A stretch of 64,000 nt of DNA, from assembly GCF_964188315.1 (NCBI RefSeq), contig NC_135662.1, forward strand, positions 7,626,001 through 7,690,000. The letters run 5' to 3'. The DNA is from Podarcis muralis (Eukaryota). Shown in pieces: positions 6,185-63,720 of the stretch. Under the pieces are notes generated by a model. The model worked only from the letters and a program-made list of their open reading frames with translations. It had not been told where the DNA came from and ran no database searches. The position numbers and the translations under genes are program-made. The number at the start of each line of letters is the position of its first letter. The first letter of the stretch is position 1.

Positions 6185-6295
6185 AGCCTGGCTTTTTCAG
6201 CCTCATAGAAGGGAACTAATGTGTCGCTTTATTGCAGATCAAGATAGCAATCAGTGATTTTAGGGGGAGGAACCTCTTGACATATAAGTCTTTCT
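6185..6295 (-). promoter_or_regulatory. Conserved upstream block, copy 1 (upstream of R1)
   Basis: atcaagatagcaatcagtgattttagggggaggaacctcttgacatataagtcttt aligns by eye with copy 4, gtcaagatagccatcaatgagtttaggaggagattctagccatgaaagtcttt. Confidence 0.6.
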
Positions 6296-7088
6296 GTCCT
6301 AAAAAGGTCTAGTCCTTTCATTAGGCAGAGCGAGGTTGCCAGTTCAGGAAACAAGTCCCCCCCCCCCCATTTTCGTTCATCGGGTTCATGTGCTATCTTT
6401 TCATTATCAGTGTACACACCCATGATTACGCACGTAAACTGTAGGAAACAAGAGTGTCATCATTTGCCAGCACACCCTTAAAGAAGAACTAAGAAACCAT
6501 AACTGGTGTAAAACGATAAATTTATTCAAATATAATCTGATGGAGGGTCTGCAAAGCAACAAATAAATATAATTATCTAAATCAAAATATAAGCCAGGCA
6601 ACGATGTTTCCTAAAGCAGGAGCCATCGGCTTGCTCCTCAATTCCTAGACACATGTTCAGGTGCCACCTGTGACCCAATAGCAAAGGATGGGAAGGGATA
6701 CTGTGAGAACTGTGTGGATGTGAATCGTGACCACAGACTTTTTTGGGCAGTTGCATGGCTTCATTACCAACCTGGGAACATTCTGCTGAAATTCTGGAAA
6801 AAATTATGCCATGACATAAATGTTCCAGCTTATGTTTTTGTCCCACTTTTTTCAGCTCTAGCCCCTCCTTGCAGCAAGGATATGGTAGCACTAGGGAAGC
6901 ATCACAGAACAAAGTAAAGTAGAATAAACCCATCACTTATTTATTTAGATCTTTTGCAATCCGCCCAACACTCAGAGGTCTCAGGGTGACTGGGTGGGAA
7001 CATATGCATATTGGAGCAAAGTAGTGCACTAAAAGAGAATATTACACAGTCAATATAAGTCACCATAAAAATGACTTATATTGACAGA

Positions 7089-7445
7089 GGACGCGGGTGG
7101 CCCTGTGGGTTAAACCACAGAGCCTAGGACTTGCCGATCAGAAGGTCGGCGGTTTGAATCCCTGCGACGGGGTGAGCTCCCGTTGCTCAGTCCCAGCTCC
7201 TGCCAACCTAGCAGTTCAAAAGCACGTCAAAGTGCAAGTAGATAAATAGGTACCACTCTGGCAGGAAGGTAAACGGCGTTTCCATGCGCTGCTCTGGTTC
7301 GCCAGAAGTGGCTTAGTCATGCTGGCCACATGACCCGGAAGCTGTATGCTGGCTCCCTCAGCCAATAAAGCGAGATGAGCGCCACAACCCCAGAGTCAGC
7401 CACAACTGGACCTAATGGTCAGGGGTCCCTTTACCTTTACCTTTA
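7089..7445 (+). mobile_element. Sauria SINE, full length
   Basis: tRNA-like head GGACGCGGGTGGCCCTGTGGGTTAAACC, body CAAGTAGATAAATAGGTAC, (ACCTTT)n tail. Confidence 0.93.
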
Positions 7446-7527
7446 AAAATGACAGAACACTATTTACTGTGGGGGTGGGCTTGGAGGAGAGGGAAAGGTG
7501 GCAATGCATCAAAGGGATGTACCAGGT

Positions 7528-7957
7528 TGTAAAGGTGGTGTTTCCCCTTCGCATTAACACCCTGGCACAGTCAGCTTGATATTTACAGTCTTTATTACAA
7601 GAAACAGCTACAGGATTGTGCATCTGAACCCGTTGAGTCAGATTCGGGGAGTGGCTTTATTTGATTCCCGCAAAAAGTAGGCGGGGTAATCGTGTGAGAC
7701 ATATTTGACCCTTATGTTTTATTTCCCTCCTTGTCTGTGCTGATTTGAAAGCCCCCTCCCTTCCAGAGTCTGAGATCCCTTCCCGGGCCTCTGGGCGGTG
7801 GAAGGGCTCTGCAACATCCCTGAGCCCTTCCTCCTCATGGCTAATCTCCAACCTCTCTTCCACTTCCTCTGTCTCTGGCCGGTTGAAAGGTTCCACAGCA
7901 TCCCCACCCCCCTGCTCTGCCTCTTCTGTCACTTCCTCCTCCAAATTCTCACTGACA
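7528..7957 (-). mobile_element. Solo LTR of an LTR retrotransposon or ERV
   Basis: TG...CA termini (tgtaaagg...ctgaca); exact 5-bp TSD CAGGT (7523-7527 and 7958-7962); AATAAA near the 3' end on the minus strand. Confidence 0.75.
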
Positions 7958-7970
7958 CAGGTGTCCAGGC

Positions 7971-7972
<2 letters not shown>

Positions 7973-8017
<45 letters not shown>
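7973..8017. repeat. (GT)n microsatellite
   Basis: Direct read. Confidence 0.98.
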
Positions 8018-8020
<3 letters not shown>

Positions 8021-8282: not shown

Positions 8283-8299
8283 CAGGGAGAAATATTTGA

Positions 8300-9426: not shown

Positions 9427-10377
9427 CTATTCCCCTTTGCTGTCTCCCTCCTCCTTTAAAACATTCTCAAGTATACTCTTAATTCTCTCCCGGGAATGAT
9501 GACTCTTCTTCCTTCCTACCAGGAAATAAATCGCAGGATTAATGGTGCTGTTAAGAGAGGCACATATGAACGCATATTCCAGGAGGTAGGGATCTTTATG
9601 AAACAGGGCCAGGTACTGAACAGCATCCATTGGGATAGCAAGGAGGAGAAAGAAGAGGAGTGTAAGTAAAATGGCCATTATAAGCTTCCCCCGCTTACAC
9701 TCATGTGGTTTTAAGTAGACCTTCATGGACAGGGTTACGGTGGAGAGGGACATTAAAAGGGTGCAGAGCAGGGCAATGGCAAGAAACTGGTAGGAGCTTA
9801 GATTACAATATTCCCCAGTTAGCCAGAGCGTGATGTGAATTCCAGACGTCACAAAGGCAAGGATCCATATTGCGGTGCACACGATGACGGACAGGTGTTT
9901 GTGCTTATGGAAGCGATACCAAATGGGGAAAAAGATGCACACAAACCTGTCAATGCTGATAACCGTCAGGAGAAGCTGGCTAGCACTGTATGTGAATAGG
10001 AAGCCAGTGTAAAACAATGACCTTAGAAGCTCAAAATGCAAGTAATGTGACTTACATACAACCCAATTCAAATCAATAGCAACTACAGCAGTGAGTACGC
10101 CAAAGTCAGCAATGGCGAGGTTCAGGACGTAGGTGGTGAAGTGATTCCTCTTGATGCGGAATGCCAGGAGCCAGATGACTGTCCCATTTCCCACAAATCC
10201 AAAAAGGCAGAGAAGCAAAGTGAAGGTGATCATGAAAAACATTGCTAAAGAACTAGCGGCACAGCTGGCCCTTGGATCACAGCTGTTATTTGTTGAGGAC
10301 TCCGTGATACTTTGCATTCCATTGTGTTCTTTTCCAGCATCCATCTGGGACAGAACTGACTGGCAGAAATTTGCCAT
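9427..10377 (-). CDS. MAS-related GPCR, R2, 316 aa (close paralog of R1)
   Basis: ATG to TAG; 7TM; YVLNLAIADF, ISIDRF, NSTINPAIYFLVG. Acceptor AG at 10425-10426. Confidence 0.95.
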   Translation of the reverse strand: MANFCQSVLSQMDAGKEHNGMQSITESSTNNSCDPRASCAASSLAMFFMITFTLLLCLFGFVGNGTVIWLLAFRIKRNHFTTYVLNLAIADFGVLTAVVAIDLNWVVCKSHYLHFELLRSLFYTGFLFTYSASQLLLTVISIDRFVCIFFPIWYRFHKHKHLSVIVCTAIWILAFVTSGIHITLWLTGEYCNLSSYQFLAIALLCTLLMSLSTVTLSMKVYLKPHECKRGKLIMAILLTLLFFLLLAIPMDAVQYLALFHKDPYLLEYAFICASLNSTINPAIYFLVGRKKSHHSRERIKSILENVLKEEGDSKGE

Positions 10378-11883
10378 CCTGGTCAGTTTCTGCTTTGATA
10401 CTCCTTCTGCTGTGGAGATTCCTCCTAGAAGAAAAGAGAAGAGCTGGATTTGTTTCTTGCTTTGGGGATAAATGCATAATGATGCTGCTCAAGTTCTCAG
10501 CTGGGTCTTCTTTGATCCCCACTGTTGATCAAAGTTAAAAGCGATTTAGATTATTCCAGATCTGTGTTATTTTCAGATCAGTTCATATTCATACTACACT
10601 GCTCCAGAGAAAGTTTCTCAGGTGCAGAGCGATTGCAGAAGGAACCACAAAAAATTAAAACGATAGAAATGAAAATACAGCTCCTTTCATTTAGAGAGTA
10701 ATCCTACTCATAGGACAATTCAGGTGATGGAACTCAAAGAGTCATTTTCAATGCACCAGAAATTGTGTCCAAGCCCATCCAAATATGAAGGTGCATGCTG
10801 GACTTGCAACTTTCATGGGGTTGGAAACATACAAAGCTTTTATATTTGGAATATACCTTGTTTGTATTGTCTATACTAGGTTAAATCCATATTAAATGAG
10901 TTACAATAAGTTTCCATTGAAATCAGTGGGACTTAAGTCATGGTTTGGGTCAACTAACTTGGCTACTACTCCAATTACCTGGGAATAAACTTCTTTGAAT
11001 TCATTAGAACTTGAAGTAGTCATGGTGAGGATTGCATTGTGAGCAATTCCTTAACTCTAGCTTACTTCCAACCAACTACTTTTTGCACATACTTTTGACT
11101 AAAGCACACATTTCTGCATTTTATTTTCACTGACATCTTTATTTCATTCTACAATTTCACTTAAATATATATGTTAGTTTAAGCATTCTTTGGTTGAAAA
11201 ACTGCACCACAAAATTCAGATAAGTGTGAATTTTGAAGGACAGTTCTATTTCACTTCACTTATGGTTCCAGTAAGTGTGAATTTGACAGATTCAGCTTTA
11301 AATGCACATTGAATCAATTTCTCCCCCATTTCTAAGAATGAGGACTAAGAGGATGGGCCAAAGGCATTAGAGAAAATATTATCTTTGAATAGGAATCAAA
11401 GGAAGAGTAAATGAGAGAATGTTGGAACCACAGGAGAATTGACCATTAATAAAAGTTGTCATGCACAGAATATCCTACCTTTACAAATCACACCTGTTGG
11501 CTCACAACTGGGTATAGATGTTCCGATGTTCTCCTCCTTGATTTTCAGGACCTCAAGCCATACATTTCCTTTCTGCTTCAAAAAAGTACTTTGCCAACTA
11601 CAACATGCCCATGCACACTGAGCATACTACCTGGAGCCGGGAGGGTCAGGGATGGGCTTTATGTTCAGACAGGGTGGGGCACAATCTTCACATCATGATG
11701 AAACGTACAAGAAATCCATTTGTTGGTGCCTCAATAACCAAGGTCAGGGCTCTGCAACTTTCTGTGTGGGCAGGAAAAAAAATGCTTCTCAAATGTAAAG
11801 TCTCAAGGGAAGTTTGCACTTATCCTTGCAGGTGTTTCAAAGCATACTCCAACTCTCTAGGATGAGAATTGAGATCTTATTTA

Positions 11884-12109
11884 CAGTGGTACCTCGGGTT
11901 ACATACGTTTCAGGTTACAGACTCCGCTAACCCAGAAATATTACCTCAGGTTAAGAACTTTACCTCAGGATGAGAACAGAAATCGCGCAGTGGTGGCGAG
12001 GCAGCAGCAGGAGGCCCCATTAGCTAAAGTGGTGCTTCGGGTTAAGAACAGTTTCAGGTTAAGAACGGACCTCCAGAACGAATTAAGTACTTAACCCGAG
12101 GTACCACTG
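11884..12109. mobile_element. Tigger-like MITE
   Basis: CAGTGGTACCTCGGGTT...AACCCGAGGTACCACTG, TA flanks. Confidence 0.9.
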
Positions 12110-12359
12110 TATTACCCTGATTTTGACCACCATGTCCTAACAAAGAAATGAATTTTGCTTGATCATATTATTCAATCCTATTCAATCAAATTACACGTTC
12201 TAAAAATCTCAGAGTATACAAGACCCCCTAAGACCCCCCCACATGCACCTGATAAACTGGTGATGATTCCTTTCCCTGTACTTACTACCTGGGCATCTTT
12301 TATTCATGGACAAAGGGCCCTTTATGGGGTGCATCTGAAATTCTCCTTCTTCCAGAATA

Positions 12360-12585
12360 CAGTGGTACCTCAGGTTACATAAGCTTCAGGTTACAGACTC
12401 CGCTAACCCAGAAATAGTACCTCGGGTTAAGAACTTTGCTTCAGGATAAGAACAGAAATCGTGCTCCGGTGGCGTGGCAGCAGCAGGAGGCCCCATTAGC
12501 TAAAGTGGCGCTTCAGGTTACAAACAGTTTCAGGTTAAGAACAGACCTCCAGAACGAATTAAGTACTTAACCCGAGGTACCACTG
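12360..12585. mobile_element. Tigger-like MITE
   Basis: Same family TIRs, TA flanks. Confidence 0.9.
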
Positions 12586-13844
12586 TACTGGAGTTCTGAA
12601 TTGCCTTGTCTAGTTTCTTGTTTTTGATCTCTAAACTTACCCCACTATTTCCTGCACAGCTTGCAGCTCCTATCAGTTACTTCATTCCACCCTCTCTCTA
12701 TATCATCAAATCACGTAGGCCCATTAATTTTAAAAAAAATTGTTGTGTGGGGAGAAGACTTAATACGTGATCATATGAAGAAAATTGTGAGCATTTGAGA
12801 AGTATTGCTCTCAAAAGCAAACACCTATGCTTGAATGCTTGGAATAAGATAAGTACAGCCTTGACTCCCAACCGAAGCTGTGTTATCATGAGGCAAATTG
12901 CTGAATCATTCAGCCCAATATTGTCTTTTACGGGGCTGCTATCTAAGATCCTTTTAACTAGAGAGCGAACCCAGGAAATTATGCTTGCCACATTTTTGCT
13001 CTATCATTGGATTAAGATCATTTTACCCCCTTTGAACCACACAAATTTCGTTTAGAATACCATGTCCCCTTTAGCATGCTTTGCCTGGTATATTGTTCTG
13101 AGTTACTGATATTTTCCTTCATACATTATGGGAGGAAATGATTTTAATTCCACCATGTAAGTATTTCCTGACTTCTTTCTCCCATTAAATGTGCAGCGCA
13201 TAAATGAATTCCTCTCTCCCCCGCCCCATTGTACTTTTGCAGAAGCCAGTTGCAGCAAGTTCTGCTTATGACTTCTGCTAAAACCTTGTACGAGGCCACA
13301 GAAAGAACTCCTGTTTGCCTTCCCGACTTCTCTTCAAACCCCCCAAAACTCAACAAGCGAAGTTTTGCAGCAACATTAAATAATGGATAGACCATGAAGT
13401 CAGAACTAATTTCAGCACATAAAATCTTAGAGCTTCTCATCTTAATTATGTTTCGCTTTTAATAAACACTACTATTCTGAATTGTAGCAATCATAGAATC
13501 ACAGAATCATAGAATTGTACAGTTGTAATCCCAAAGGATCATCTTTTCCTCACTTGTTTCAAGTTCTCTGCACATTCGAGAGGAGAGAAGGTTATGTTGT
13601 TATCAAATAATGGATAGAACCAAACTTTGCAGATATAACCACTGACTAATCAATGGATACGAAAAATAAATAAATCACATCACCATCTTGGTTGAAGGCC
13701 ATCACTACCTCCGGTGGAACTTGGATGTGAGGCTGAGGAAGGGCGCAGCTCTCTCAGGTGAGAGGTAGAAGGATTCAAGCCTCCGTATATGGATTGGCGA
13801 TGAAGATAAAATGGTGATAAAGGCATACATATACTTAGATATGT

Positions 13845-13930
13845 GTTTTGTTTTGTTTTGTTTTGTTTTGTTTTGTTTTGTTTTGTTTTGTTTTGTTTTT
13901 CCTTTCCTTTCCTTTCCTTCCTTTCCTTTC
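13845..13930. repeat. (TTTTG)n followed by (CCTTT)n microsatellite
   Basis: Direct read; followed by an L1-like 3' UTR ending AATAAA...AAATAAATAAATAAAA at about 14023. Confidence 0.95.
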
Positions 13931-14025
13931 CATTTTTATTATTCTTTCCAGACTAGTTTGGTTCTTTATTGTATAATAAGTTGAAAATCTTCAATAAAAT
14001 TGATTTAAAATAAATAAATAAAATA

Positions 14026-14285
14026 CAGTGGTACCTCTGGATATGAACGGGATCCGTTCCGGAGCCCCGTTCGCATCCTGAAGTAAACGTAACACGTGAC
14101 TGCATGTCTGCGCATGTGCGGGTCAAGTTTCGCCACTTCCGCACATGCTCGTGACATCATTTTGAACGCCTGCGCATGCGCGAGTGGTGAAACCCGGAAG
14201 TAATGTGTTCTGTTACTTCCGGATCGCTGCAGAGTGTAACCCAAAAATACTTAACTTGAAGCTACTTTAACCTGAGGTATGACTG
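14026..14285. mobile_element. Tigger-like MITE, second family
   Basis: CAGTGGTACCTC...GAGGTATGACTG termini, TA flanks, different interior with TGCGCATGCGC palindromes. Confidence 0.8.
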
Positions 14286-14779
14286 TATGCCTCACAAAGA
14301 ATACCCTATCTTCTTCAGTAACCCTGTGTTTGCTGACAAGTGGGAGTAGACAAAAGTCTGATTTTCTCCTCCTAGAATGACAGGATCTTGAGTCCCAAGT
14401 CCCCTCTCTTTTTCCAAAAGCATTTGTCTATCCACCTCTTTCCATCCATAACTGAGCACACAAGCTTGGGCATAGGATTTCGGGAAGAGGCTTTATGCAT
14501 TTACATCATGATGAATGTGCAAATAATTGGTATATGTCCAATTAGCAAAGCCAGGGCTCTTCTACTTTTCTTGGGTGCTCCAGAAATTGCTTGTGCACAG
14601 GAGAAATTGCTGCCCAAAGTCTCAAGAGTGGTGTGTGCTTTATACATGCACTTCATTCAAAGTGCTTTCCAGTACTTTGTGCAATTTGAACATAGTGCTC
14701 TTAGCACATAGATCTGATCTCTGAGCTCTGCAAAACACAAATTTTAAGTAGAAAGCTCAATCATACAAATGTCCACTTT

Positions 14780-21580: not shown

Positions 21581-22059
21581 CTAGAATAAAGGCTGTTCCC
21601 ATCACAGGCTTCCATAAATCATCCTTCAGACATTAGCATATGAAGTTGGCTTCAGGAGGCTCCCCTTGTGATATAATCAAACTGTTAATCAGTCTAACCT
21701 TGCATCTGTCTCCTTTCTTCAGAGCAGCAGTGACTTGCAAGTGTCCCAGACATCCTTTTCAAGCTAATCCGCTCAATAACCAGCAACTTGGAATTAACCT
21801 GGGACATTCTCCATGCAAGGACTATATGCTCCCAATGAGTTATGGGATTTCCCCTCTTTTCATGTGCCTGAGATGAAGAACAGATCAACAATCCTCATAA
21901 AGGATGATAAGAAATCAAAAGTGTGGAACAATATCCTGTGATGAAAAGGGAGGACATACAGAAATATTTCTGTACACCTCAAGTCCCAAGCGGGAGAGGA
22001 AATTGTGTTGTTTTTGAAACTCACAGCAAGATGTAGAATGGAAAGTCCCACCCACCTTT

Positions 22060-22170
22060 CATCATGACTTTATCAGTTGCCAGATTCATACCACAAGAGG
22101 AAAATGCTCATTTTCTGGTCAACAAGATAACCATCTATGAATCGAGGAGGAAGAGACCCTTCTTGTGCAA
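22060..22170 (-). promoter_or_regulatory. Conserved upstream block, copy 2 (upstream of psi1)
   Basis: ctttatcagttgccag..acaagaggaaaatgc..ctggtcaacaagataaccatctatgaatcgaggaggaagagac aligns with copies 3 and 4. Confidence 0.6.
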
Positions 22171-24694: not shown

Positions 24695-24855
24695 TGACAA
24701 GACAGAAGTACTGTTTTGGGGGGACAGGGGGCAGGCTGGTGTGCAGGACTCCCTGGTCCTGAATCGGGTAACTGTGCCCCCGAAGGACCAGGTGTGCAGC
24801 CTGGGAGTCATTTTGGACTCACAACTGTCCATGGAGGCACAGGTCAATTCTGTAT
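24695..24855 (+). mobile_element. L2 LINE internal fragment
   Basis: LVLNRVTVPPKDQVCSLGVILDSQLSMEAQV, the post-RT region of L2. Confidence 0.75.
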
Positions 24856-24960
24856 CTTTATCAGTTGCCAGCTTCTTATCACAAGAAGAAAATGCTATTT
24901 TTTGGTCATCAAGATAATTTTCTGTGAAGTTAAGAGGAGGAGACTATTCTTGTGTAAGAC
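24856..24960 (-). promoter_or_regulatory. Conserved upstream block, copy 3 (upstream of psi2)
   Basis: ctttatcagttgccag..acaagaagaaaatgct..ttggtcatcaagataattttctgtgaagttaagaggaggagactatt matches copies 2 and 7. Confidence 0.6.
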
Positions 24961-35602: not shown

Positions 35603-35659
35603 ATTTGCACTTATTACTCCTGATATCTCATGAAAGGAGCTGAAAGATGTACGTTATGC

Positions 35660-35775
35660 TTTATGTCTTGGCTTAATCAGTTGGCCAACAACATGTGACA
35701 AGAAGACACCCTTTTACTGGCTGTCAAGATAGCCATCAATGAGTTTAGGAGGAGATTCTAGCCATGAAAGTCTTT
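35660..35775 (-). promoter_or_regulatory. Conserved upstream block, copy 4 (upstream of R3)
   Basis: Shares tgtcttggcttaatc exactly with copy 5; caagatagccatc..taggaggagattc is shared with copies 1 and 2. Confidence 0.62.
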
Positions 35776-37587: not shown

Positions 37588-38327
37588 GCTCACTTGCTCC
37601 TTGTGGGATCCTTATCTCTTCTTCTAGAGTATGAGTGACGGCTAAGAGAAATAAAATGTTACAGAGAACATTTCAAGTGGAAAAGTTCAAGTGGAATTCC
37701 ATACATGACCCAGAATGATGTGTTCTTCTCAGTTTGGCTTTGCTCAGAGACTTGAGGGCGGTGCTATTGCAAAGGAATCAGAAAAGGTCATTGTAGTCCA
37801 TGCTGTCTTACTTCGATCAAAATCCACTCCCGCCAGTAGATACTCTAGCACATCCCTTTCAATATCCTTCCAGAATAGATGCTGTATAGGGGCATTTCCC
37901 TCCAATAACCTATAAGAATAAGATTGGTGGAACATTTTGATTGCCAATGGACACAATGACCCATCACCAGTCCTCTGGGAGACAAATGTCAAAGTAGGTA
38001 TGGCTGAACCCAACCAATTCATTTCCATTTGCCTCAATAAATATAGCACCGTCTCCTTACAAGGTATTCATTATTTATTCCCCCTTTATTCATGTCCACC
38101 CCTTTTGAGATACCATATTGATTTCCACCCCATCCACCCACATCTGCTTTCCCCCTTTCTCTTCCACCCATATGAGAAGGTCTGAAGCTCATAGAGAACA
38201 TGTCTGCTTTGTATTCAGAAGGTACAAAAACTGACCCTCAGCATTTCCAGGTAGATATGGGAATGTCCTCCATGAACCATTGAGATTCACTACCAGCCAG
38301 GGAAGATAATAACAGTTATTCCGTACC

Positions 38328-38477
38328 TAGAGCATGAGACTGGTTGAGCAAGAGACTCTTAATCTCAGGGTTGTGAGTTTGAGCCCCATTTTGGCTGAAA
38401 GATTCCTGCATTGCAGAGGCTTGGAGTAGATGATTCTCATGTTCCTTTCCAACTCTAGAATTCTGTGATTTTATGAT
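38328..38477 (+). mobile_element. tRNA-Lys(CTT)-derived SINE with a CR1-type tail
   Basis: AGAGCATGAGACT..CTTAATCTCAGGGTTGTGAGTTTGAGCCCC follows the tRNA-Lys-CTT 3' half; tail CCTTTCCAACTCTAGAATTCTGTGATT. A partial duplicate lies at 41971-42073. Confidence 0.75.
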
Positions 38478-38959
38478 GTATTCTACAATACCTGCAAAAA
38501 CACACAATGTACTTATTGACTCTGGATCCCATGTTCTCTCTCTCCCCTAAGAATCTGCTTTAAACTGAGTCTGATCATTGGTCCATCTACGTAGTTCAGT
38601 ATTGGTCACATTGACTACCAGACACTCCTAGGGATTTCAAAGAAGGTTGTCTCTGATCCCAGCAGGAGACTCAAATAGAGACATTCCATATGCAAAGCAG
38701 CTGCTACGCACTGAGCTACTTGGCCATGTCTTCCTACGTCTTTTCCCATGCATGTTTCTAATTTGCTCTGTCACTAAGCTTCACCCAACCACCCAGAGGG
38801 TACTTATTTTACAACTTGCTGACAAAGTATGGATTGGGAGTCTTCAGATATGGTGATCAGAAGACAACAGGGACAAAGTATCCTGCAACAGAATGGGAGG
38901 TACTAAGGTCTTAGCAAGGCAATGGGGCACCAATCATTCCTCAAAGAAAAATGGGAAAT

Positions 38960-39250
38960 CTTACCAATTTCATGCCGATCCCACCTATTCTTTGTCTTGG
39001 CTTAATCTGTTTCCCTGCCTCATGTAGCAATATCATGTTCTTTAAGTGGTTGTGAGGATAAATGCCATCTGGCCTAGGAGGAGGAGACTCTTGTCATTTA
39101 AAGACCTATGTCCCCAAATGCCAGTTTGTAATGAGTACTGAAGGGGAAACTGAACACACGTCTCATGTGCTTCTTTATCTGTAACGGCCAAGTAAAACAT
39201 CTCAGGACCTGTCATGATAACAGATAAAACCATCCTTGCCCTTTAACGGC
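38960..39250 (-). promoter_or_regulatory. Conserved upstream block, copy 5 (predicted promoter and exon 1 of R4)
   Basis: Minus-strand donor TG|GTAAGA at 38964; core aggaggaggagactcttgtcat; TTATCT (GATA) 39175-39180; TCATGTG 39163-39169; TAACGG at 39182 and 39244. Confidence 0.65.
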
Positions 39251-39396
39251 ATATAACATTTGCCCAATATGCACATTTTGTAGGGAGGGGGTGAGCACAG
39301 AAGGGAAAATAAGATTTTCCAAAATGTCTTGCTGTTTCTTCCCTGTGTAAAACCATAGGTGAGAAGTGGAGTGGGATGCAAGAGCTGTCGGTTCTT

Positions 39397-41264: not shown

Positions 41265-41802
41265 GTTGAATGACGGCGTGTGGAATCCTTGTCACCTCTT
41301 CTGGAGCATAAGTTTCCTCTAGGAAAATATCACAAAGATGTTTGACTCAGCTGGAATTCTGTGCAAAACTCAGAATTGTGAGAGCGAAGAGCCCATTGAA
41401 CAACATATAAACCCACCTCATCTGTCTATCAAGTCAAAAGTCATATATGTGCAGTTCTCTGCAATATAACTGAATCCCCCACATAGGCCACACCCCTCTG
41501 GATTTTTTCTCATTGAGGTTTTTTTGGACTTTAGTGAGTTAGTTTACCTGGAAACTTGGTTTGATTAGTGACAAGAGAAGAAGTCAGTACAGCATTTCCT
41601 GGTCTTCTGGCATTATTGTCTGATACGTAATGTCTCTCCAAAATTGAGGTTCAGTCATATTTCTTTTGCTATGGCCAAGCTCATCATTCCTGCTTAGGAA
41701 GAGATATCAGTAAGGATGAAGGAGATGGACTGAGACAGAATGAGAAGGATGCCACCTTGTTTAGCGAAGATTGATATAAAGTTTTATAGCAGTGAATTTT
41801 AT

Positions 41803-41922
41803 AGCCGTGGCGTGGCGGCAGTGGGAGGCCCCATTAGCGAAAGTACACCTAAGGTTAAGAACCCTTTCGGATTAAGAAAGGACCTCCGGAATGAATTAAG
41901 TTCGTAACCCGAGATACTACTG
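41803..41922. mobile_element. Half Tigger-like MITE at the unit A/B junction
   Basis: Only the right half and right TIR (AACCCGAGATACTACTG-TA) are present. Confidence 0.75.
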
Positions 41923-42548
41923 TATCCTAATTTACTAACTAGTTGCAGGAAACAAAATTACTGCTTCAGAAGGGTTGTGAGTTTGAGCCCCACTTTGGTT
42001 GAAAGATTCCTGCATTGCAGGAGCTTGGGCAAGATGGTCCTCATGGTCCCTTCCAACTCTACAATTTTATGATGTATTCTACAATACTTGCAACACACCA
42101 TGCACTTATTGACTCTGGATCCCATGTTCTCTCTCTCCCCTAAGAATCTGCCTTAAACTGAGTCTGATCATTGGTCCATCTAGCTCAGTATTGGTCACAT
42201 TGACAACCAGACACGCCTAGGGATTTCAAAGAAGGTTGTCTCTGATCCCAGCAGGAGACTAAAATGGAGACATTCCATATGCAAAGCAGCTGCTACGCAC
42301 TGAGCTACTTGGCCATGTCTTCCCATGTCTTTTCCCATGCATGCTTCTAATTTGCTCTGTCACTAAGCTTCAGCCAACCACCCAGAGGGCAGTTATTTTA
42401 CAACTTGCTGACAAAGTATGGATTGGGAGTCTTCAGATATGGTGATCAGAAGACAACAGAGCCAAAGTATCCTGCAACAGAATGGTAGGTACTAGGGTCT
42501 TAGCAAGGCAAAGGGGCGCCAATCATTCCTCAAAGAAAAATGGGAAAT

Positions 42549-42840
42549 CTTACCGATCTCATGCCGATCCCACCTATTCTTTGTCTTGGCTTAATCTGTT
42601 TCCCTGCCTCATGTAGCAAGATCATGTTCTTTAAGTGGTTGTGAGGATAAATGCCATCTGGCCCAGGAGGAGGAGACTCTTGTCATTTAAAGACCTATGT
42701 CCCCAAATGCCAGTTTGTAATGCGTACTGAAGGGGAAACTGAACACACGTCTCATGTGCTTCTTTATCTGTAACGGCCAAGTAAAACATCTCAGGACCTG
42801 TCATGATAACAGATAAAACCATCCTTGCCCTTTAACGGCA
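42549..42840 (-). promoter_or_regulatory. Conserved upstream block, copy 6 (upstream of R5; near-identical to copy 5)
   Basis: Donor at 42553; TCATGTG 42752-42758; TTATCT 42764-42769; TAACGG at 42771 and 42833. Confidence 0.65.
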
Positions 42841-47863: not shown

Positions 47864-48195
47864 CTTACCAGTCTCACTCAAAGGTGCAAAATGGTCCCTC
47901 CTGTTCTTCATCTGGGTTTAATTTGATTCTCTGCCTCATAGGGCAAGAAGATGCTCTTTAATTGGATATGAAGATCATTATCAGTTCACCAAGGAGGAGG
48001 AGACTATTGTCATATATGTCCCAAAAGGCTACAGTCATGAAGACTAGGTTTGTAATTGGTTCTGGAGGAAGCAGCTCATGTCTCACATACTTTTTTATCT
48101 GTACCAGACAAATGGAATAAATGTAGACCTCAACCCCAGATTTCTAATCAAGGCTGTCTAAGCAAGATAACAACTTCCTGGCCTTTTAACGGCCA
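47864..48195 (-). promoter_or_regulatory. Conserved upstream block, copy 7 (upstream of R6)
   Basis: Donor TG|GTAAGA at 47868; core aaggaggaggagactattgtcat; TTATCT 48095-48100; TAACGG 48187-48192. Confidence 0.65.
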
Positions 48196-48630
48196 AAAGC
48201 ATTTGTCCCTATGTGCCTTTTAATGGGTTGGGGGAGTTGACTATTGGTGGGGAGACATGACTACCTAGGGTGGGAGGGAAGGTTGCTCTTGAGTAGGCCA
48301 ACTAGGTGGAGGGGGGCAAGGAGTCAGAGCCATTTGCTGTGTCCCATGGAAGGGCCCTGATCCACCAGGTCATTCGTCATGCCCCCCTTCATTAGCAGGC
48401 AATTCCATGGTAACCAATGTAATGTTTATTTCTTTTCACTTATTTCATAAAATTTATATACTGCTTGATTGTAAAAAAAGAATAAACAGAAACATCAAGA
48501 AAAATCACAACCATACTTTGAAACATGCAAAAGTTAAAATACTGAAGCAGGTTGAATAGATGCTAAGCTTTGCCATGATATATTGTGTGTAAGGTAATAT
48601 TATTTGAACTCCAGTTAACATTAATATCTA

Positions 48631-55431: not shown

Positions 55432-55814
55432 TAATCTCATTGTGTCTGGATATCATATTTGCTCTCTCCCTTGGCAAAACCTCAGGAAGTCACCTTCCTG
55501 AGTCTGAGTTAGACTATTGGTTTATCAAGATCAGGACTTGTCAAACAGACTCTCAGTGCCACTCTGTAGCATTTTTAAAAGTGGTCTTTTCAACCCTACC
55601 TGGAGGTGCCGGGAATCAACCTTCTGCAAGCACCACAGCTATGGCCTTTCCTGTGAATGTTTCACCCAACCTTCTGACTAACTGCAGATCAGCAGTCTTC
55701 AGAGATGGTGAGTGCAAGAGAACAAGGACACAACAACTATGACTGGAATGGCAGGTCCATGCACTTAAGAGAGAAAATATGGTCCCACTCATGCCCCAGG
55801 GGAAAATGATAAAT

Positions 55815-56145
55815 CTTACCAGTTTCACTCAGAGGTGCAAAACGGTCCGTCCTGTTCTTCATCTGGGTTTAATTTGATTCTTTGCCTCATAGGGCAAGAA
55901 GATGCTCTTTAATTGGATATGAGATAATTATCAGTTCACCAAGGAGGAGGAGACTATTGTCATATATCTCCCAAAAGGCTACTGTCATGAAGACTAGGTT
56001 TGTAATTGGTTCTGGACGAAGCAGCTCATGTCTCACATACTTCTTTATCTGTACCAGACAAATGGAATAAATCAAGACCTCATCTCCAGATTTCTAATCA
56101 AGGCTGTCTAAGCAAGATAACAACTTCCTGGCCCTTTAACGGCCA
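55815..56145 (-). promoter_or_regulatory. Conserved upstream block, copy 8 (upstream of R7)
   Basis: Donor at 55819; AGATAA 55922-55927; TTATCT 56045-56050; TAACGG 56137-56142. Confidence 0.65.
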
Positions 56146-56576
56146 AAAGCATTTGTCCCTATGTGCCTTTTATTGGTTGGGGGAGTTGACTATTGGTGGG
56201 GAGACATGACTACCTAGGGTGGGATAGAAGGTTGCTTTTGAGTAGGCCAACTAGGTGGAGGGGGGCAAGGAGTCAGAGCCATTTGCTGTGACCCATGGAA
56301 GGGCCCTGATCCACCAGGTCATCCATCATTAGCAGGCAATTCCATAGTAACCAATGTAATGTTTATTTCTTTTCACTTATTTCATAAAATTTCAATTAAA
56401 AAACACACACACCCCAAAGCAGCTTACAAAAGAATGAACAGAAAAATCACGAAAAATCACAACCATACTTTAAAACATGCAAAAGTTAAAATACTGAAAC
56501 AGATTTAATAGATGCTAAGCTATGATATATTGTGTTTGCGGTAATATTATTTGAACTCCAATTATATTAATATCTA

Positions 56577-58740: not shown

Positions 58741-59793
58741 TGGATTAAAATGAGAAGTGTTTACTTAACACAACTACTGTAAAGGTCTGCAAATGGGTAA
58801 CAGTTACTATATAAAGGAATTTCCAATGGCATGAGCTCCTATACATCTGACGCATAATGTTCTTGTACCTGTCACTTCAAAATGTTGGCCAAGCTCCATT
58901 GACTCAGGGGAACAGATTAGTTAATTCCCTTCCCGTAGTCATTTCTTGCAGGTACGTTAACAATGCAATCCAAACCCAAGATTTGCCGAGATTACGGAGT
59001 AAAAAAAATCATTTCATTCACTTTATCCCCACCGCCATATTCCCATATGAAAACCCATGCTCAAAGTGGCTTACAACAACAAAACAGGGATGCATTTCAA
59101 ACAAACCATACAAAAACAATTTATTAATAATAAAAAACAACAACATAGCGATAATACTATGATAACATCGGAAAACAAATATATAATTGCATAAAATAAA
59201 CCACATGTCAATAGTATAACAAAGTCATCTAAACAGCATGTAGCCTCCAACATCAAAAAGAACAAGGGAGTTTCCCAATAACTCTCTCATTCAAAGGTAT
59301 ATTTTTTTTACACCCTTGAGACTAAGGTTGGATGAGCAATCTTCAGATTTCTTGAGCACAAAACAAGAGCAGCCTGCTGGGATGGCAGGTGTGAAGGACA
59401 TATGGAAAAAATGTGGTACCAGTTGTGTCCCAAAGAAGTATGTACAATTTACAATTTACAATTTTTCTATTCTCATTCCAAGTTGTACAGATGATTCCAG
59501 CCGATCTTTGTCTTGACTATTTCAGCTTGTGAAATATAGGTGCACAATGTGGAGCATTTTGAGCTATAGGGCTTTATATCTCCATGGTCAACATTTCAGG
59601 GGCTGCATACCATTGGGGGGGGGGACACAGAAGAAGAAAGATTGAGATAATAAAAGACATGATTCCTCCCTTTGTAAAGTAGGATACATTTCAGCTACAC
59701 AAACCTCAAAATTGTCAACAAAACCCAATCCTCTTTTTCTGGTGAGCAATAGTCATCAATGCAGTCCAAGGACAAAATACAGCCAAAGAACTC

Positions 59794-60795
59794 TTACGAA
59801 AGGTTCCGAAGTGGGATCGAACAAGGAGGGTTCATTTCCTGTCTGTCATTCTCCTCTTCATTCAAAACCCGCTGGAGGATGACCAGTAGGCTCTCCCTAG
59901 ATTGACCTCCCTTCTTCCTCCCAACCAGAAAATAAAGCAACGGGTTCACACTGCTGTTGAGGGAGGCACACAAAAAGCCATAACGGACTGGAATGGGAAT
60001 TTTCAGGAGTAAAATTAATCTACAGAAAAGAATGGCATTGAGTGGGAAAGCAAGCATGAGGAAGAAGAGGAGTGTAAGTAAAATAACTATTAAAAGCCTT
60101 CCCCGCTTTTGCGGGTGGGATTTAAAACAGACTTTGATGAAAAGAATCACAGTTGAAATTGTCATGAGTGGGAGGCAAAGCAGTCCAGTCAAGAAAAATT
60201 GAAAATATGCTGTGACGATATAAAGACCGATGTTATATGATATAAAGGGAAATGTTTCTGAGAGAATGGAGAGGATTATGGAGAGAAGACAGGAGAGGAC
60301 CCATATGAGGGCACACACAGTGGTGGACAAATGGGTTGGCCGGACACACCGATGCCAAATAGGGAAGAGGACAGACACACATCTGTCAATGCTGATGGCT
60401 GTCAGAAGAAGTTGGCCAGTGTTGTATGTGAAGGATAAGAGACCAAAAGCAATACTATAAAGAAGATAATCAGGAAGCCTAATAAAAGTACGGAACTGTA
60501 GGCTCAGGAGGAATGCAAAGTCAGCAACAGCCAAATTAAGGATGTAGGTGGTGAACGGTTTCCTCCTAATGCGGAAACCAAGAAGCCAGATGACTGTTCC
60601 ATTCCCCAAAAATCCCACACAGCAGATAACTAAAATGAAGACATTTATTATAGTTTCTTCATATTGCTCATATTGGAAATCTTCTTGGTCATTATATGAG
60701 CTATTATAAGTTTCGTTGTACTCCTTATATGTCACAGCAACCGCAGCAGATTGCAAAGTCCCATTGATTTGTCTTTCCATGCTGAATGACTGCAT
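59794..60795 (-). CDS. MAS-related GPCR, R8, 333 aa
   Basis: Intact 7TM ORF, ATG to TAA; acceptor AG at 60835-60836. Confidence 0.96.
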   Translation of the reverse strand: MQSFSMERQINGTLQSAAVAVTYKEYNETYNSSYNDQEDFQYEQYEETIINVFILVICCVGFLGNGTVIWLLGFRIRRKPFTTYILNLAVADFAFLLSLQFRTFIRLPDYLLYSIAFGLLSFTYNTGQLLLTAISIDRCVSVLFPIWHRCVRPTHLSTTVCALIWVLSCLLSIILSILSETFPFISYNIGLYIVTAYFQFFLTGLLCLPLMTISTVILFIKVCFKSHPQKRGRLLIVILLTLLFFLMLAFPLNAILFCRLILLLKIPIPVRYGFLCASLNSSVNPLLYFLVGRKKGGQSRESLLVILQRVLNEEENDRQEMNPPCSIPLRNLS

Positions 60796-61329
60796 GTGGA
60801 AATGTTGTCTCCTCTTCTAGAACAGAAGTTTCTTCTAGGGAATGGAAAAGATCACAAAGATGTTTGACTCAGCTGGAACTCTGTGCAAAACCCAGAATTG
60901 TGAGAGCCAGGAACCCACTGAACCCACAAATTTTGTCTATCAAGCCAAAAATCATATATGTGCAATTCTTTGCCATCTAACTGAATCCCCCACATGGGCC
61001 ACACCCCTCTGGATTTTTTCTCATTGAGGGGTTGTTGTTTTTTTGGACTTTAGTGAGTTAGTTTACCTTGAAACTGGGTTTGATTGGTGCCAAGAGAAGA
61101 AATCAGTACAGCATTGCCTCGTCATCTGGCATTTACTGTCTGATATATAATGTCTCTCCAAAATTGGGGTTCAATCATTTTTCTTTTGCCATGGCCAAGC
61201 TCATCATTCTTGGCTTAGGAAAGAGACATCAGTAAGAATGAAGGAGATGGGCTGAGACAGAATGAGAAAGATGCCACCTTGTTTAGGGAAAGATTGCTAT
61301 AAAGTTTTATAGCAGTGAATTTCACTTAC

Positions 61330-61414
61330 CTACTGCACATTCATCTAGGTTGGTGGCACTACCTTCCAATGCAATAGGATCAGGCTGGGAACGAATGAGG
61401 ATGTGCAGGAGGTT
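61330..61414 (-). other. Predicted 85-nt 5' UTR exon of R8, proximal copy
   Basis: Acceptor ctctttcAG (61415-61416); donor AG|GTAAGT (61329). Confidence 0.55.
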
Positions 61415-61704
61415 CTGAAAGAGAGGTCAGGCAGTAATGTCACATTTTTTCTTATTTTTTCTCATTGAGTTTTGATTGGTGCTAAGAGAAGAAGTCAGTA
61501 CAGCATTCCCTGGCATTATTGTCTGGTATGTAATGTCTCTCCAAAATTGGGGTTCAGTCATATTTCTTTTGCTATGGCCAAGCTCATCATGCCTGCTTAG
61601 GAGGAGATATCAGTAAGCATGATGAACTGGAACAGGATGAGAAAGACACACCCTTCTTTAGGGAAAGATTGATATAAAGTTTTATAGCAGTGAATTTCCC
61701 TTAC

Positions 61705-61789
61705 CTACTGCACATTCATCCAGCTGGGTGAGGCTATCTTCCAATGCAATAAGAGCAGGCTAGGAATTAATGAGGATGTGCAGGAGGTT
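61705..61789 (-). other. Predicted 85-nt 5' UTR exon of R8, distal copy
   Basis: Acceptor at 61790-61791; donor AG|GTAAGG (61704); part of a local duplication of about 375 bp. Confidence 0.55.
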
Positions 61790-62774
61790 CTGAAAGAGAG
61801 GTCAGGCAGTAATGTCACATTTTTTCTTATTACGTATAACTCTTTTTGTACTTCAGTTCCTAGGATCTCCCCAAAATAGAGCAAGCTTTCTGATATGTCT
61901 ATATTGGCTCCCCCCTAACCAAGGAGGCTGTTTTTGACGGATGGGAAGCAAACACATGGTGGAGGGGCAGGGGTTTACCCAAGTAGTAGTAGCACCTTTA
62001 AGAAGCAAACATAATTGATAGATAAACAAATGAACAGATACCCCTGGTGGTGGTGATTCAGAAAATTTATAATACTCTCCCCTCCAAATTCCCCAGTCAT
62101 TTTGCTAGTGCAAGGAAACTGAGCATTAGCATTTGGGCTGTTACTTTAGGTGCAATTGAGAGCTGGTGGCATCACACCTTCGTGGCTTTCAGCTTGGCCC
62201 TACTCCAGGCACCTGTTTACGTCTACATCCCCTTCCTCCACAGTAGCCTCACACACAATATGCTGGGAAGACTTCGCAGTCCTCCTTGCCTACCAGATTC
62301 TCCTCTGGGGTGATGGGGAAATTTCCAAGAACTGGCAAGCAACCCAAGTAAATAGTGTGGAGAATTCTGATGATGGGGTAGGGATGTAACTAATCTTCAC
62401 TTGTAAGGACCAAGAATAAGGAAAGTGCTCTACTGGCATTCTGAGAGTTGACTCAATGAGTGTCTTATAGAAAAGGGAGAAACGAACTCTTCAGGGGGAT
62501 AACTATTGTTCTGTAGCTTCACACTAAGGATTTAGTCACTCACAGAACAGAGGAAGGAATTCAAGAATTAAAGAGAGTGTATATGTTTATATATTAAGCG
62601 GAATCCCCTCATTGTATGTGCTTCCAGGAACATGGATATCTGCTCCCTTCGTATTGCTTTAATAAGACCAACTTTCCCAAGAATTCCCTGATCAATCAGA
62701 GGTGAATTGCCTGCACTGGACTTGGATCACTTGAAATTACCCAGTCTATTCTGTGTACTTGTTAAAATACATTA

Positions 62775-63010
62775 CAGTACAGATTAAGTACTTAATTTGT
62801 TCCCGAGGTCCATTCTTAACCTGAAACTGTTCTTAACCTGAAACACCACTTTAGCTAATGGGGCCCCCTGCTGCTGCCGCCCCACTGGCGCACGATTTCT
62901 GTTCTCATCCTGAAGCAAAGTTCTGAACCCAAGGTACTATTTTTGGGTTAGCGGAGTCTGTACCCTAAAGAATATGTAACCAGAAGCGTAAGTAACCCAA
63001 GGTACCACTG
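62775..63010. mobile_element. Tigger-like MITE (duplicate of 55196)
   Basis: Same sequence and same insertion site as the 55196 copy. Confidence 0.88.
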
Positions 63011-63389
63011 TAATCTCATTGTGTCTGGATATCATGTTTGTTCTCTCCCTTGGCAAAACCTCAGGAAGTCACCTTCCTGAGTCTGAGTTAGACTATTGGT
63101 CTATCAAGATCAGGACTTGTCAAACAGACTCTCAGTGCCACTCTGTAGTATTTTTAAAAGTGGTCTTTTCAACCCTACCTGGAGGTGCCGGGAATCAACC
63201 TTCTGCAAGCACCACAGCTTGCATCCTGTGAATGTTTCACCCAACCTTCTGACTAACCGCAGATCAGCAGTCTTCAGAGATGGTGAGTGCAAGAGAACAA
63301 GGACACAACAACTATGACTGGAATGGCAGGTCCATGCACTTAAGAGAAAAAATATGGTCCCACTCATGCCCCAGGGGAAAATGATAAAT

Positions 63390-63720
63390 CTTACCAGTTT
63401 CACTCAAAGGTGCAAAACGGTCCGTCCTGTTCTTCATCTGGGTTTAATTTGATTCTTTGCCTCATAGGGCAAGAAGATGCTCTTTAATTGGATATGAGAT
63501 AATTATCAGTTCACCAAGGAGGAGGAGACTATTGTCATATATCTCCCAAAAGGCTACTGTCATGAAGACTAGGTTTGTAATTGGTTCTGGACGAAGCAGC
63601 TCATGTCTCACATACTTCTTTATCTGTACCAGACAAATGGAATAAATCAAGACCTCATCTCCAGATTTCTAATCAAGGCTGTCTAAGCAAGATAACAACT
63701 TCCTGGCCTTTTAACGGCCA
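63390..63720 (-). promoter_or_regulatory. Conserved upstream block, copy 9 (upstream of R8)
   Basis: Donor at 63394; TTATCT 63620-63625; TAACGG 63712-63717. Confidence 0.65.

What the first reader, a model, noticed from the sequence alone, without database searches (positions are those of the whole stretch)
6185..63720. One diverged non-coding element recurs upstream of almost every receptor (9 copies): a cluster-specific promoter and exon 1
Seen: a core of about 110 bp with + strand pattern ct(t/a)aatc..caaga..atgct..tgg..caagata..catc..aggaggaga(c)t..cat occurs at about 6185, 22060, 24856, 35660, 38990, 42580, 47905, 55858 and 63433. It is always in the same orientation, with one copy upstream of each of R1, psi1, psi2 and R3-R8; none was found for R2. 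It stays alignable between subgroups whose other flanks are not. AGATA(A/G) occupies the same position in 6 of 9 copies. A minus-strand donor TG|GTAAGA follows in the five right-hand copies, and a GT seems to be kept at roughly that position in copies 1, 2 and 4. Inference: a shared cis-element defining the transcription start of each gene, conceptually like the protocadherin CSE or olfactory-receptor promoter motifs. It would not appear in an ORF- or repeat-based annotation.
Basis: partly seen in the sequence, partly recalled or inferred. Interest (0 to 1): 0.75.

Follow-up and report, generated by a model that had tools for sequence, protein, structure and literature searches.

The report
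Shared first exon of lizard MRGPRs
A non-coding block of about 125 bases kept upstream of nine tandem Mas-related receptor genes of the common wall lizard is their untranslated first exon, with the likely promoter beside it; RNA shows it spliced at the predicted sites in two genes, and this is the ordinary way duplicated receptor genes carry their control region along.

Summary
Each of the five lineages is recovered at E <= 2.5e-9 when left out of the model. R2 has no copy.

RNA contigs of one public run of the same species are spliced GT..AG on the gene strand from 38964 and 42553. So the block is a transcribed, non-coding exon 1.

Three things were new:
- Exon 1 joins a small second non-coding exon, not the coding exon.
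- The core itself is mostly 5'UTR rather than upstream DNA.
- The transcription start is not mapped.

Within young pairs, a 95-98% identity plateau runs from about 350 bp upstream to the donor. This is the pattern described for mouse V1R "promoter homology islands". Deep pairs are only 52-60% identical, close to fourfold coding sites, so constraint is modest.

Copies 2 and 3 belong to dead genes, and copies 1 and 4 lack a convincing donor. No CTCF-like or O/E motif was found. GATA-type sites are about 3-fold enriched, which is a lead only.

The scan has noted comparable promoter blocks upstream of V2R and OR genes in this genome, but not this one. Verdict: real, mostly as read, a new member of a known kind.

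The parts
6168..6287 (-). core copy c1, 1.2 kb upstream of R1 (3996-4958)
   Evidence: nhmmer E 1e-23. Found at E 2.5e-9 when left out of the model. TTATAT at its 5' edge and AGATAG at the aligned position. No good donor: best scores 3.2 and 0.9.
22045..22169 (-). core copy c2, 5.4 kb upstream of the pseudogene remnant psi1 (15670-16635), across the gap at 19514-19663
   Evidence: The TATA-like box is lost at the aligned place.
24847..24957 (-). core copy c3, 147 bp upstream of psi2, a fragment holding only TM7 (24557-24700)
   Evidence: 80.5% identical to c2 over 113 bp.
35649..35769 (-). core copy c4, 5.2 kb upstream of R3 (29448-30437), across the gap at 32009-32138 and several repeat insertions
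   Evidence: E 1.2e-15 when left out. No TATA-like box and no donor at the aligned place.
38965..39101 (-). core copy c5 = exon 1 of R4. RNA covers at least 38965-39074. The 5' end is not mapped.
   Evidence: X1 contig piece 38964-39074 and joint 37907/38963 (cut +2) with CT..AC on the + strand. Donor TTG|GTAAGA.
37910..38964 (-). intron 1 of R4 (1055 nt, GT..AG). Exon 2 starts at 37909.
   Evidence: Spliced X1 contig, depth 7.8, 56 letters on the shorter side. Sequence read.
42554..42690 (-). core copy c6 = exon 1 of R5
   Evidence: X1 joint 41688/42553 (cut +1) with CT..AC on the + strand. X1 depth 8.9 in bin 42550-42749. A few X19 raw reads with the first mate on +. Donor TCG|GTAAGA.
41690..42553 (-). 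intron 1 of R5 (864 nt, GT..AG)
   Evidence: Spliced X1 contig, depth 12.7.
41548..41689 (-). non-coding exon 2 of R5 (142 nt)
   Evidence: The acceptor is used in RNA. Donor CAG|GTAAAC is conserved in R5-R8.
41359..41547 (-). intron 2 of R5 (189 nt). Exon 3 starts at 41358, 94 nt before the ATG at 41264.
   Evidence: X1 contig with joint 41361/41579 and 25 letters between. Those letters are the tail of exon 2, with 2 changed letters and a 3-nt gap, so the real junction is 41548 to 41358.
47869..48016 (-). core copy c7 = predicted exon 1 of R6, donor CTG|GTAAGA at 47868
   Evidence: Homology only; no RNA was laid here. Predicted exon 2 is 46279-46415.
55820..55966 (-). core copy c8 = predicted exon 1 of R7, donor at 55819
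   Evidence: Predicted exon 2 is 53296-53437. The R7 coding exon has an in-frame TAG at 52947-52949.
63395..63541 (-). core copy c9 = predicted exon 1 of R8, donor at 63394
   Evidence: Predicted exon 2 is 61067-61209, with its acceptor shifted (CCAAG|AA).
47870..48370 (-). identity plateau of about 500 bp (95-98%) between the R6, R7 and R8 units, running from about 350 bp upstream of exon 1 to its donor: the candidate promoter region
   Evidence: Sliding identity. Intron 1 just below it is 79-88% and the CDS is 86-88%.
39102..39300 (-). candidate promoter of R4, 97-99% identical to the R5 copy at 42691-42889. It shares AGATAAAGAAG and ATTACAAAC with the R6-8 type.
   Evidence: D-type and E-type align from -90/-190 to +289 at 75%.

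Best explanation
The block is the non-coding first exon, with its splice donor and the adjoining proximal promoter, of the ancestral duplication unit of this Mas-related (MRGPRH-like / MAS-like) receptor array in Podarcis muralis. Each tandem duplication copied the coding exon together with its 5' exon or exons, so every unit has one copy, in the gene's orientation, 1.2-5.4 kb upstream.

**Shown.** In R4 and R5 the block is transcribed and spliced from GTAAGA donors at 38964 and 42553. It joins a small second non-coding exon, and in R5 that exon joins the coding exon 94 nt before the ATG.

**Inferred.**
- The same holds for R6-R8, which have the same donor and conserved exon-2 splice sites.
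- Transcription starts at or a little upstream of the 5' edge of the core. A TATA-like box is kept there in the six copies upstream of R1 and R4-R8 (R7's coding exon carries a stop).
- Sequence there, and GATA-type sites around it, drive expression.

The core outlasts the rest of the flank because it carries the start region, the exon and the donor. Gene conversion probably also homogenises about 500 bp around it within young subfamilies. Copies 2 and 3 are relics upstream of dead genes. Whether copies 1 and 4 still work as exons is open.
For: - **Nine copies only.** All share one orientation and lie one per unit. Leave-one-lineage-out recovery is E <= 2.5e-9.
- **Spliced RNA.** Contigs carry GT..AG on the gene strand at two paralogous loci, exactly at the predicted donors. 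A third junction joins exon 2 to exon 3.
- **X1 depth behaves like RNA.** It is zero in intron bins (37950-38149, 38750-38949, 39150-39349, 42350-42549) and positive in exon bins. Raw stranded reads of X19 lie with the first mate on +, as expected for minus-strand RNA.
- **Splice sites kept.** The exon-2 acceptor and donor are conserved in R5-R8.
- **The core is the only shared flank.** In +-400 nt contexts, the best local alignment between lineages falls inside the core in 18 of 20 pairs. Apart from repeats, blastn finds no other shared non-coding DNA across subgroups.
- **Young pairs.** A 95-98% plateau runs from about -350 to the donor, against 79-88% in the intron and 88% at fourfold sites.
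- **TATA-like box.** It sits at the 5' edge in c1 and c5-c9.
- **Low copy number.** RNA depth over the core is about 13, against more than 10,000 over neighbouring SINE-like repeats, so it is not a high-copy repeat at 95% likeness.
- **Known parallel.** The same architecture is described for mouse V1R genes (PMC1955453).
Against: - **Start not mapped.** Contigs cannot show starts. One contig has 28 unaligned letters on an unknown side of 38964-39074.
- **RNA evidence is thin.** It comes from one study, at low depth (8-13), for two of nine copies. Run X1 is only guessed to be RNA by its record. The splicing is what shows it.
- **Deep conservation is modest.** Core identity is 0.52-0.60, against 0.38-0.58 at fourfold sites. 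At D-versus-E depth the core (0.75) equals fourfold sites (0.74-0.81).
- **Pseudogene copies score as well as live ones.** Copies 2 and 3 score about as well as copies 1 and 4, so retention by descent alone explains much.
- **Weak parts in some copies.** c1 and c4 lack good donors, and c4 lacks the TATA-like box.
- **No broader test.** No cross-species or genome-wide test was possible.
Confidence: 0.72

Rival explanations
1. Passive relic. The block is exon 1, but it carries no family-specific regulatory information. It stays alignable only because of common descent, a short length with few indels, the need for a donor, and gene conversion between neighbours. The control elements lie elsewhere.
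For: - Deep-pair identity is about that of fourfold sites.
- The pseudogene copies c2 and c3 are kept as well as c1 and c4.
- Tracts of 1-2 kb at 94-98% identity (38367-39403 vs 41971-42992; 54568-56425 vs 62156-64000) look like recent duplication or conversion.
- Stewart and Lane raise conversion for V1R promoter islands.
Against: - It is the only non-repeat flank that aligns across all five lineages.
- The young-pair plateau stops at the donor.
- The TATA-like box is kept in the six copies upstream of R1 and R4-R8 and is lost in both pseudogene copies.
- GATA-type sites are 3.3-fold enriched, with at least one in every lineage.
Confidence: 0.2
2. Internal exon. Transcription starts further upstream, and the block is entered through an acceptor after its pyrimidine tract. 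The real promoter is then not adjacent.
For: - c5 reads CCTCCTCCTAG|G at 39075/39074, exactly where the listed X1 contig piece stops aligning. That contig has 28 letters that fit nothing on the stretch.
- c2 and c3 have an AG a few bases further on.
Against: - The AG is absent at that place in c6 (TGG), c7-c9, c1 and c4, although the pyrimidine tract is kept.
- X1 depth is zero in the next upstream bin, 39150-39349.
- No joint into the block from upstream was reported.
Confidence: 0.06
3. Fragment of an old dispersed transposable element that happens to lie in the duplicated unit.
For: - The window is full of SINE-like repeats.
- No repeat library or genome-wide search was available, so an ancient TE origin of the ancestral promoter cannot be excluded.
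Against: - There are only nine copies in 64 kb, all in one orientation and at the same place in each unit. None lies elsewhere on either strand.
- Summed contig depth is about 13, against more than 10,000 for the real repeats next to it.
- No Rfam match was found.
Confidence: 0.02

Closest known systems
V1R 'promoter homology islands' with non-coding 5' exons (mouse; Lane et al. 2002; Stewart and Lane 2007, PMC1955453)
   Same: - Both are tandem arrays of single-coding-exon GPCR genes.
- An island of non-coding homology lies kilobases upstream, separated from the coding exon by a low-homology intron.
- Non-coding exons are spliced to the coding exon.
- Identity within young subfamilies is as high as or higher than in the coding region, with gene conversion a possible cause.
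   Different: - Here the family is Mas-related receptors in a lizard.
- The piece shared across all lineages is short (about 125 bp, against 500-1000 bp) and is mostly transcribed.
- Homology crosses subfamilies directly, without motif-finding tools.
- Start sites are not mapped here.
Protocadherin conserved sequence element (CSE) upstream of each variable exon
   Same: One conserved non-coding element per unit of a tandem array, close to a first exon.
   Different: - The CSE is about 22 bp, lies upstream of a coding variable exon, binds CTCF and serves stochastic promoter choice.
- Here no CTCF-like core was found by pattern.
- The element is a 5'UTR exon.
- Nothing is known about choice.
Olfactory-receptor promoters (O/E plus homeodomain sites)
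   Same: AT-rich promoters without CpG islands, with non-coding 5' exons. TAAT-containing stretches occur in the core.
   Different: No O/E consensus lies within -100..+155 of any copy. OR promoters share motifs, not an alignable block.
Mammalian MRGPR gene structure (non-coding 5' exon or exons plus one coding exon; from general knowledge, not checked here)
   Same: The same general layout of untranslated 5' exons and an intronless coding region.
   Different: I found no paper describing a shared promoter or first-exon block for MRGPR clusters. Homology of this lizard block to mammalian 5' exons was not tested.

Membership tests
Mas-related / MAS-like GPCR gene array | Rhodopsin-type 7TM coding exon whose nearest relatives are named Mas-related or MAS-like | tested here: met
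   7tm_1 hits for all eight ORFs, with R3 just under Pfam's cut-off. The best database hits are 'mas-related G-protein coupled receptor member H-like' and 'proto-oncogene Mas-like' of Podarcis muralis and other lacertids.
Promoter / 5'-exon homology island of a tandem receptor family (V1R type) | Island of non-coding homology upstream of each paralogue, separated from the coding exon by poorly conserved intron | tested here: met
Promoter / 5'-exon homology island of a tandem receptor family (V1R type) | Island contains a non-coding exon spliced towards the coding exon | tested here: met
   GT..AG joints 38964>37910 and 42553>41690, and 41547>41359. Shown for two of nine copies.
Promoter / 5'-exon homology island of a tandem receptor family (V1R type) | Transcription start sites map inside the island | tested here: inconclusive
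   RNA contigs reach at least 39074 and the next bin upstream is empty. Contigs cannot show starts, and raw reads were too few.
Promoter / 5'-exon homology island of a tandem receptor family (V1R type) | Promoter activity of the island | not testable with these tools
   Needs reporter assays, ATAC-seq or CAGE.
Protocadherin-type CSE | CTCF-type core motif in each copy | tested here: not met
   Pattern CCASYAGRKGGC is absent on both strands from -100 to +155 of all nine copies.
Olfactory-receptor-type promoter | O/E (EBF) site near the start | tested here: not met
   TCCCNNGGGA is absent from all nine regions.
Dispersed transposable element | Many copies in both orientations and in unrelated contexts | tested here: not met
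   Within the window there are nine copies, in one orientation and one per gene unit. Contig depth is low. A genome-wide count was not testable.
Structured RNA element | Conserved secondary structure or an Rfam family | tested here: not met
   RNAalifold predicts 0 pairs. No Rfam match at gathering score.

The most novel reading that the evidence does not exclude
The block and its about 100-350 bp upstream flank form a family-specific control module of squamate Mas-related receptor arrays. It would be built around GATA-type sites and a pyrimidine tract at the start site. It would set the cell type of the whole expanded cluster (mast-cell-like or sensory-neuron-like), or take part in choosing one receptor per cell, and would be conserved in other lizards and snakes.
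Probability: 0.15. Interest if true: 0.5.

Novelty: new member of a known kind. Interest (0 to 1): 0.3.

Why it matters
The result gives gene models with two untranslated 5' exons, and candidate promoters, for a large and little-studied lizard-specific expansion of Mas-related receptors. It also names a short set of kept motifs to test: a TATA-like box, a pyrimidine tract and GATA-type sites. If the block proved conserved across squamates and drove cell-type-specific expression, it would be a handle on where these receptors act. As it stands, it shows the ordinary rule that tandem duplication carries the promoter and first exon along, as already described for vomeronasal receptor genes.

Tried and rejected
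- **Cross-species test.** The other collections hold no reptile genomes.
- **Structured-RNA reading.** RNAalifold gave no pairs and Rfam gave nothing. Rejected.
- **Conserved uORF or peptide in exon 1.** An ATG is kept in 8 of 9 copies. The frames and lengths differ (an 8-nt gap in c1; stops after 5 to 21 codons), as read from alignments A1 and A3. Not pursued.
- **My first guess for the acceptor.** I took the pyrimidine-AG 40-55 nt before each ATG. For R5 the RNA uses 41359/41358 instead.
- **TATA box placing the start at 39074.** This rested on where one contig piece stops. That stop may be a graph break or a junction, so I keep the box only as a candidate.
- **Depth arithmetic for the 5' end.** It proved unreliable because most contig pieces are not listed.
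- **GATA2 link to MRGPRX2 promoters.** The papers found do not show it.
- **Findings look-up by sequence.** Blank, which means nothing.
- **Left undone on purpose.** The N gaps were left as they are.
Full report
**What the window is**

Eight open reading frames of 274-333 codons lie on the minus strand. They are R1 3996-4958, R2 9427-10377, R3 29448-30437, R4 36622-37593, R5 40296-41264, R6 45020-46003, R7 52020-52844 and R8 59794-60795. All match Pfam 7tm_1, with R3 just under the curated cut-off. The nearest database proteins are 'mas-related G-protein coupled receptor member H-like' and 'proto-oncogene Mas-like' of Podarcis muralis. R5 is 95% identical to its best hit, and other lacertids follow. 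That confirms an earlier scan note naming the common wall lizard.

Two dead remnants also lie on the minus strand. psi1 is at 15670-16635 and is split by a repeat. psi2 is at 24557-24700 and holds only the last helix. R7 has an in-frame TAG at 52947-52949.

**The gaps**

The gaps at 19514-19663 and 32009-32138 lie between psi1 and copy 2, and between R3 and copy 4. No copy of the element is within 2.3 kb of a gap. Those two gene-element pairings do cross unread sequence, though, and I could not test continuity.

Yes.
- MAFFT aligns the nine stretches in gene orientation, with 27 invariant columns over a core of about 125 nt.
- A profile of the core finds those nine places and nothing else. All are on the minus strand, at E 1e-20 to 1e-34, and the next hit is at E 0.24.
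- Such E-values are circular, so I left out each of the five lineages in turn. The lineages are A = c1, B = c2 and c3, C = c4, D = c5 and c6, and E = c7 to c9. The omitted copies came back at E 2.5e-9 to 8e-22, while the best non-member stayed at E >= 0.003.
- R2 has no copy.
- The 'kept GT' in copies 1, 2 and 4 is weak.

**Is it more than the rest of the flank?**

Apart from SINE-like repeats, blastn finds no other non-coding similarity across subgroups. I took 400 nt on each side of each copy and compared lineages. The best local alignment fell inside the core in 18 of 20 pairs. The D and E types align further, from about -90 or -190 to +289 at 75%.

Pairwise identity of the core in deep pairs is only 0.52-0.60. 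Fourfold coding sites give 0.38-0.58, and random or flanking DNA gives about 0.49. At D-versus-E depth the core (0.75) equals fourfold sites (0.74-0.81). So constraint on the letters is modest. What stands out is that the block stays gap-poor and in place.

Within young pairs the picture is sharper. R6 compared with R7 or R8 shows a plateau of 95-98% from about 48370 down to about 47870. That is about 350 bp upstream of the core through to the donor. Identity then drops to 79-88% in the intron. Their coding exons are 86-88% identical. R4 and R5 show 97-99% over 39300-38950.

**RNA**

It did list small contig sets guessed to be RNA, and unindexed raw RNA runs of the same species label. I laid X1, X5, X19 and X20 on 36750-42749.

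X1 has three informative joints.

1. From 37907 to 38963, with the cut 2 further right and CT..AC on the + strand. On the gene strand this is a GT..AG intron at 38964-37910. The donor is TTG|GTAAGA and the acceptor is TTCTTATAG|G.
2. From 41688 to 42553, with the cut 1 further right and CT..AC. This is intron 42553-41690, with donor TCG|GTAAGA and acceptor CTAAGCAG|G.
3. From 41361 to 41579, with 25 letters between. Read on the gene strand, those letters are the tail of exon 2 with two changed letters and a 3-nt gap. They are followed by CAG and then the sequence from 41358 downwards. The true junction is therefore exon 2 ending at 41548 (CAG|GTAAAC) joined to 41358 after TTTTGCACAG. That makes a 189-nt GT..AG intron.

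Other features of the data agree that X1 holds RNA.
- X1 depth is zero in the intron bins and positive in the exon bins.
- The few X19 raw reads on 42550-42749 and on the coding exon have the first mate on +. That is the usual sign of minus-strand RNA.

So exon 1 is real for R4 and R5, and X1 holds RNA whatever its record says.

**Gene structure**

R5 has three exons.

| Part | Coordinates |
|---|---|
| Exon 1 | 42554 to at least about 42615-42663 |
| Intron 1 | 864 nt |
| Exon 2 | 41689-41548 |
| Intron 2 | 189 nt |
| Exon 3 | from 41358, with the ATG at 41264 |

The exon-2 acceptor, its donor and the exon-3 acceptor are conserved in R6, R7 and R8, although R8's first acceptor is shifted. With the GTAAGA donors at 47868, 55819 and 63394, the same three-exon model is predicted for them. 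Their predicted exon 2 lies at 46415-46279, 53437-53296 and 61209-61067.

R4's exon 2 starts at 37909. Its end is only predicted (GAA|GTAAGA at 37811). Exon 2 of R4 and exon 2 of R5 are not alike. Exon 1 is the only 5' exon shared across subfamilies.

R5 has a D-type upstream unit, 94-98% identical to R4's. Its body is E-type, 92-93% identical to R6. This agrees with another note on this window.

**Where transcription starts**

This is not shown. One listed X1 contig piece aligns to 38964-39074 with five other letters. It has 28 more letters that fit nothing on the stretch, and I cannot tell on which side they lie. In c5 the sequence reads CCTCCTCCTAG|G at 39075/39074, which looks like an acceptor. 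That AG is missing in c6, c7-c9, c1 and c4, while the pyrimidine tract is kept. I therefore read the tract as part of the start region rather than a splice signal. The internal-exon reading remains a minor rival.

The bin 39150-39349 is empty in all four runs.

A TATA-like box (TTTAAA, ATATAT or TTATAT) sits at the 5' edge of the core in c1 and c5-c9. It is lost at that place in c2, c3 and c4. In c5 it lies 28 nt upstream of 39074.

The core is thus mostly or wholly 5'UTR. The promoter proper is inferred to be the next 100-350 bp. That stretch is conserved within subfamilies, and D and E types share short pieces of it, such as AGATAAAGAAG and ATTACAAAC.

**Motifs**

WGATAR occurs 17 times in the nine regions from -100 to +155. 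That is 7.5 per kb, against 2.24 per kb in the whole window. Every lineage has at least one, while only 40% of random 255-nt windows do. This is a lead, not a finding. The papers I found do not show GATA factors on MRGPR promoters.

No CTCF-like core and no O/E site occur in any copy. The regions are AT-rich with 0-5 CpG, so they are not CpG islands.

No consensus RNA structure was predicted and there was no Rfam match. An upstream ATG is kept in eight copies, but the short frames behind it differ.

**Comparison with what is known**

The closest description is the mouse V1R work of Lane and colleagues. Islands of non-coding homology lie kilobases upstream of single-coding-exon receptor genes. 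Start sites and non-coding exons map inside them. Substitution in some of them is as low as in coding sequence, and gene conversion is a possible cause (PMC1955453).

The present block fits that kind. It differs in family and host. The shared piece is shorter and mostly transcribed. Direct alignment works across subfamilies.

The protocadherin CSE and olfactory-receptor promoter comparisons hold only as loose analogies.

The scan has noted similar promoter blocks upstream of V2R and OR genes in this same genome. It has not noted this one. The array itself extends well beyond the window.

**Limits**

- RNA support comes from one study, at low depth, for two copies.
- No start-site data were available.
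- The TE rival is excluded only within the window and by contig depth.

**Verdict**

The feature is real. The exon-1 reading is confirmed for two genes and very likely for three more. The promoter reading is plausible but untested. Copies 2 and 3 are relics, and copies 1 and 4 are uncertain. It is a new member of a known kind and of modest interest.

Noticed in passing
window 52947-52949 (minus strand): R7 has an in-frame TAG at codon 25 of an otherwise R8-like coding exon (86% identical). It is a young pseudogene, a polymorphism or an assembly error. Its upstream exon-1 copy c8 is 100% identical to c9 over 163 bp.
   Followed up: partly
window 38367-39403 vs 41971-42992, and 40107-41799 vs 44831-46524: R5 is a mosaic. 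Its exon 1 and promoter unit is 94-98% identical to R4's. Its exon 2, intron 2 and coding exon are 92-93% identical to R6's. RNA shows that the hybrid is spliced correctly (intron 42553-41690).
   Followed up: partly
window 24557-24957: Core copy c3 lies only 147 bp upstream of a fragment that encodes just the last transmembrane helix. A deletion has removed intron 1 and most of the coding exon.
   Followed up: no
window 40228-40262, 44952-44986, 51959-51996, 59728-59765 (minus strand): Weak matches (E 0.003-0.5) of core-model positions 28-67 lie just past the stop codons of R5, R6, R7 and R8. They may be chance similarity of AT-rich sequence.
   Followed up: no
window 39350-39949 and 41750-42149: SINE-like repeats have summed contig depth of 1,000 to 45,000 in the RNA-like runs and many reads in raw RNA runs. 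The 5243-5510 and 7086-7444 families recur more than ten times in the window, in both orientations.
   Followed up: no
window 41551-41578: The X1 contig across exon 2 of R5 differs from the reference by two letters and a 3-nt gap within 28 nt. It comes from a divergent allele or an unseen close paralogue.
   Followed up: no
window 39074-39087: In c5 only, the kept pyrimidine tract ends in TAG|G, an acceptor-like site. One RNA contig piece stops aligning exactly there, with 28 unplaced letters.
   Followed up: partly
window 10378-15669: R2 is intact and 85% identical to R1, with a good acceptor about 65 nt before its ATG. It has no copy of the element and no recognisable first exon. The R1-R2 homology stops about 50-60 bp upstream of the ATG.
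   Followed up: partly
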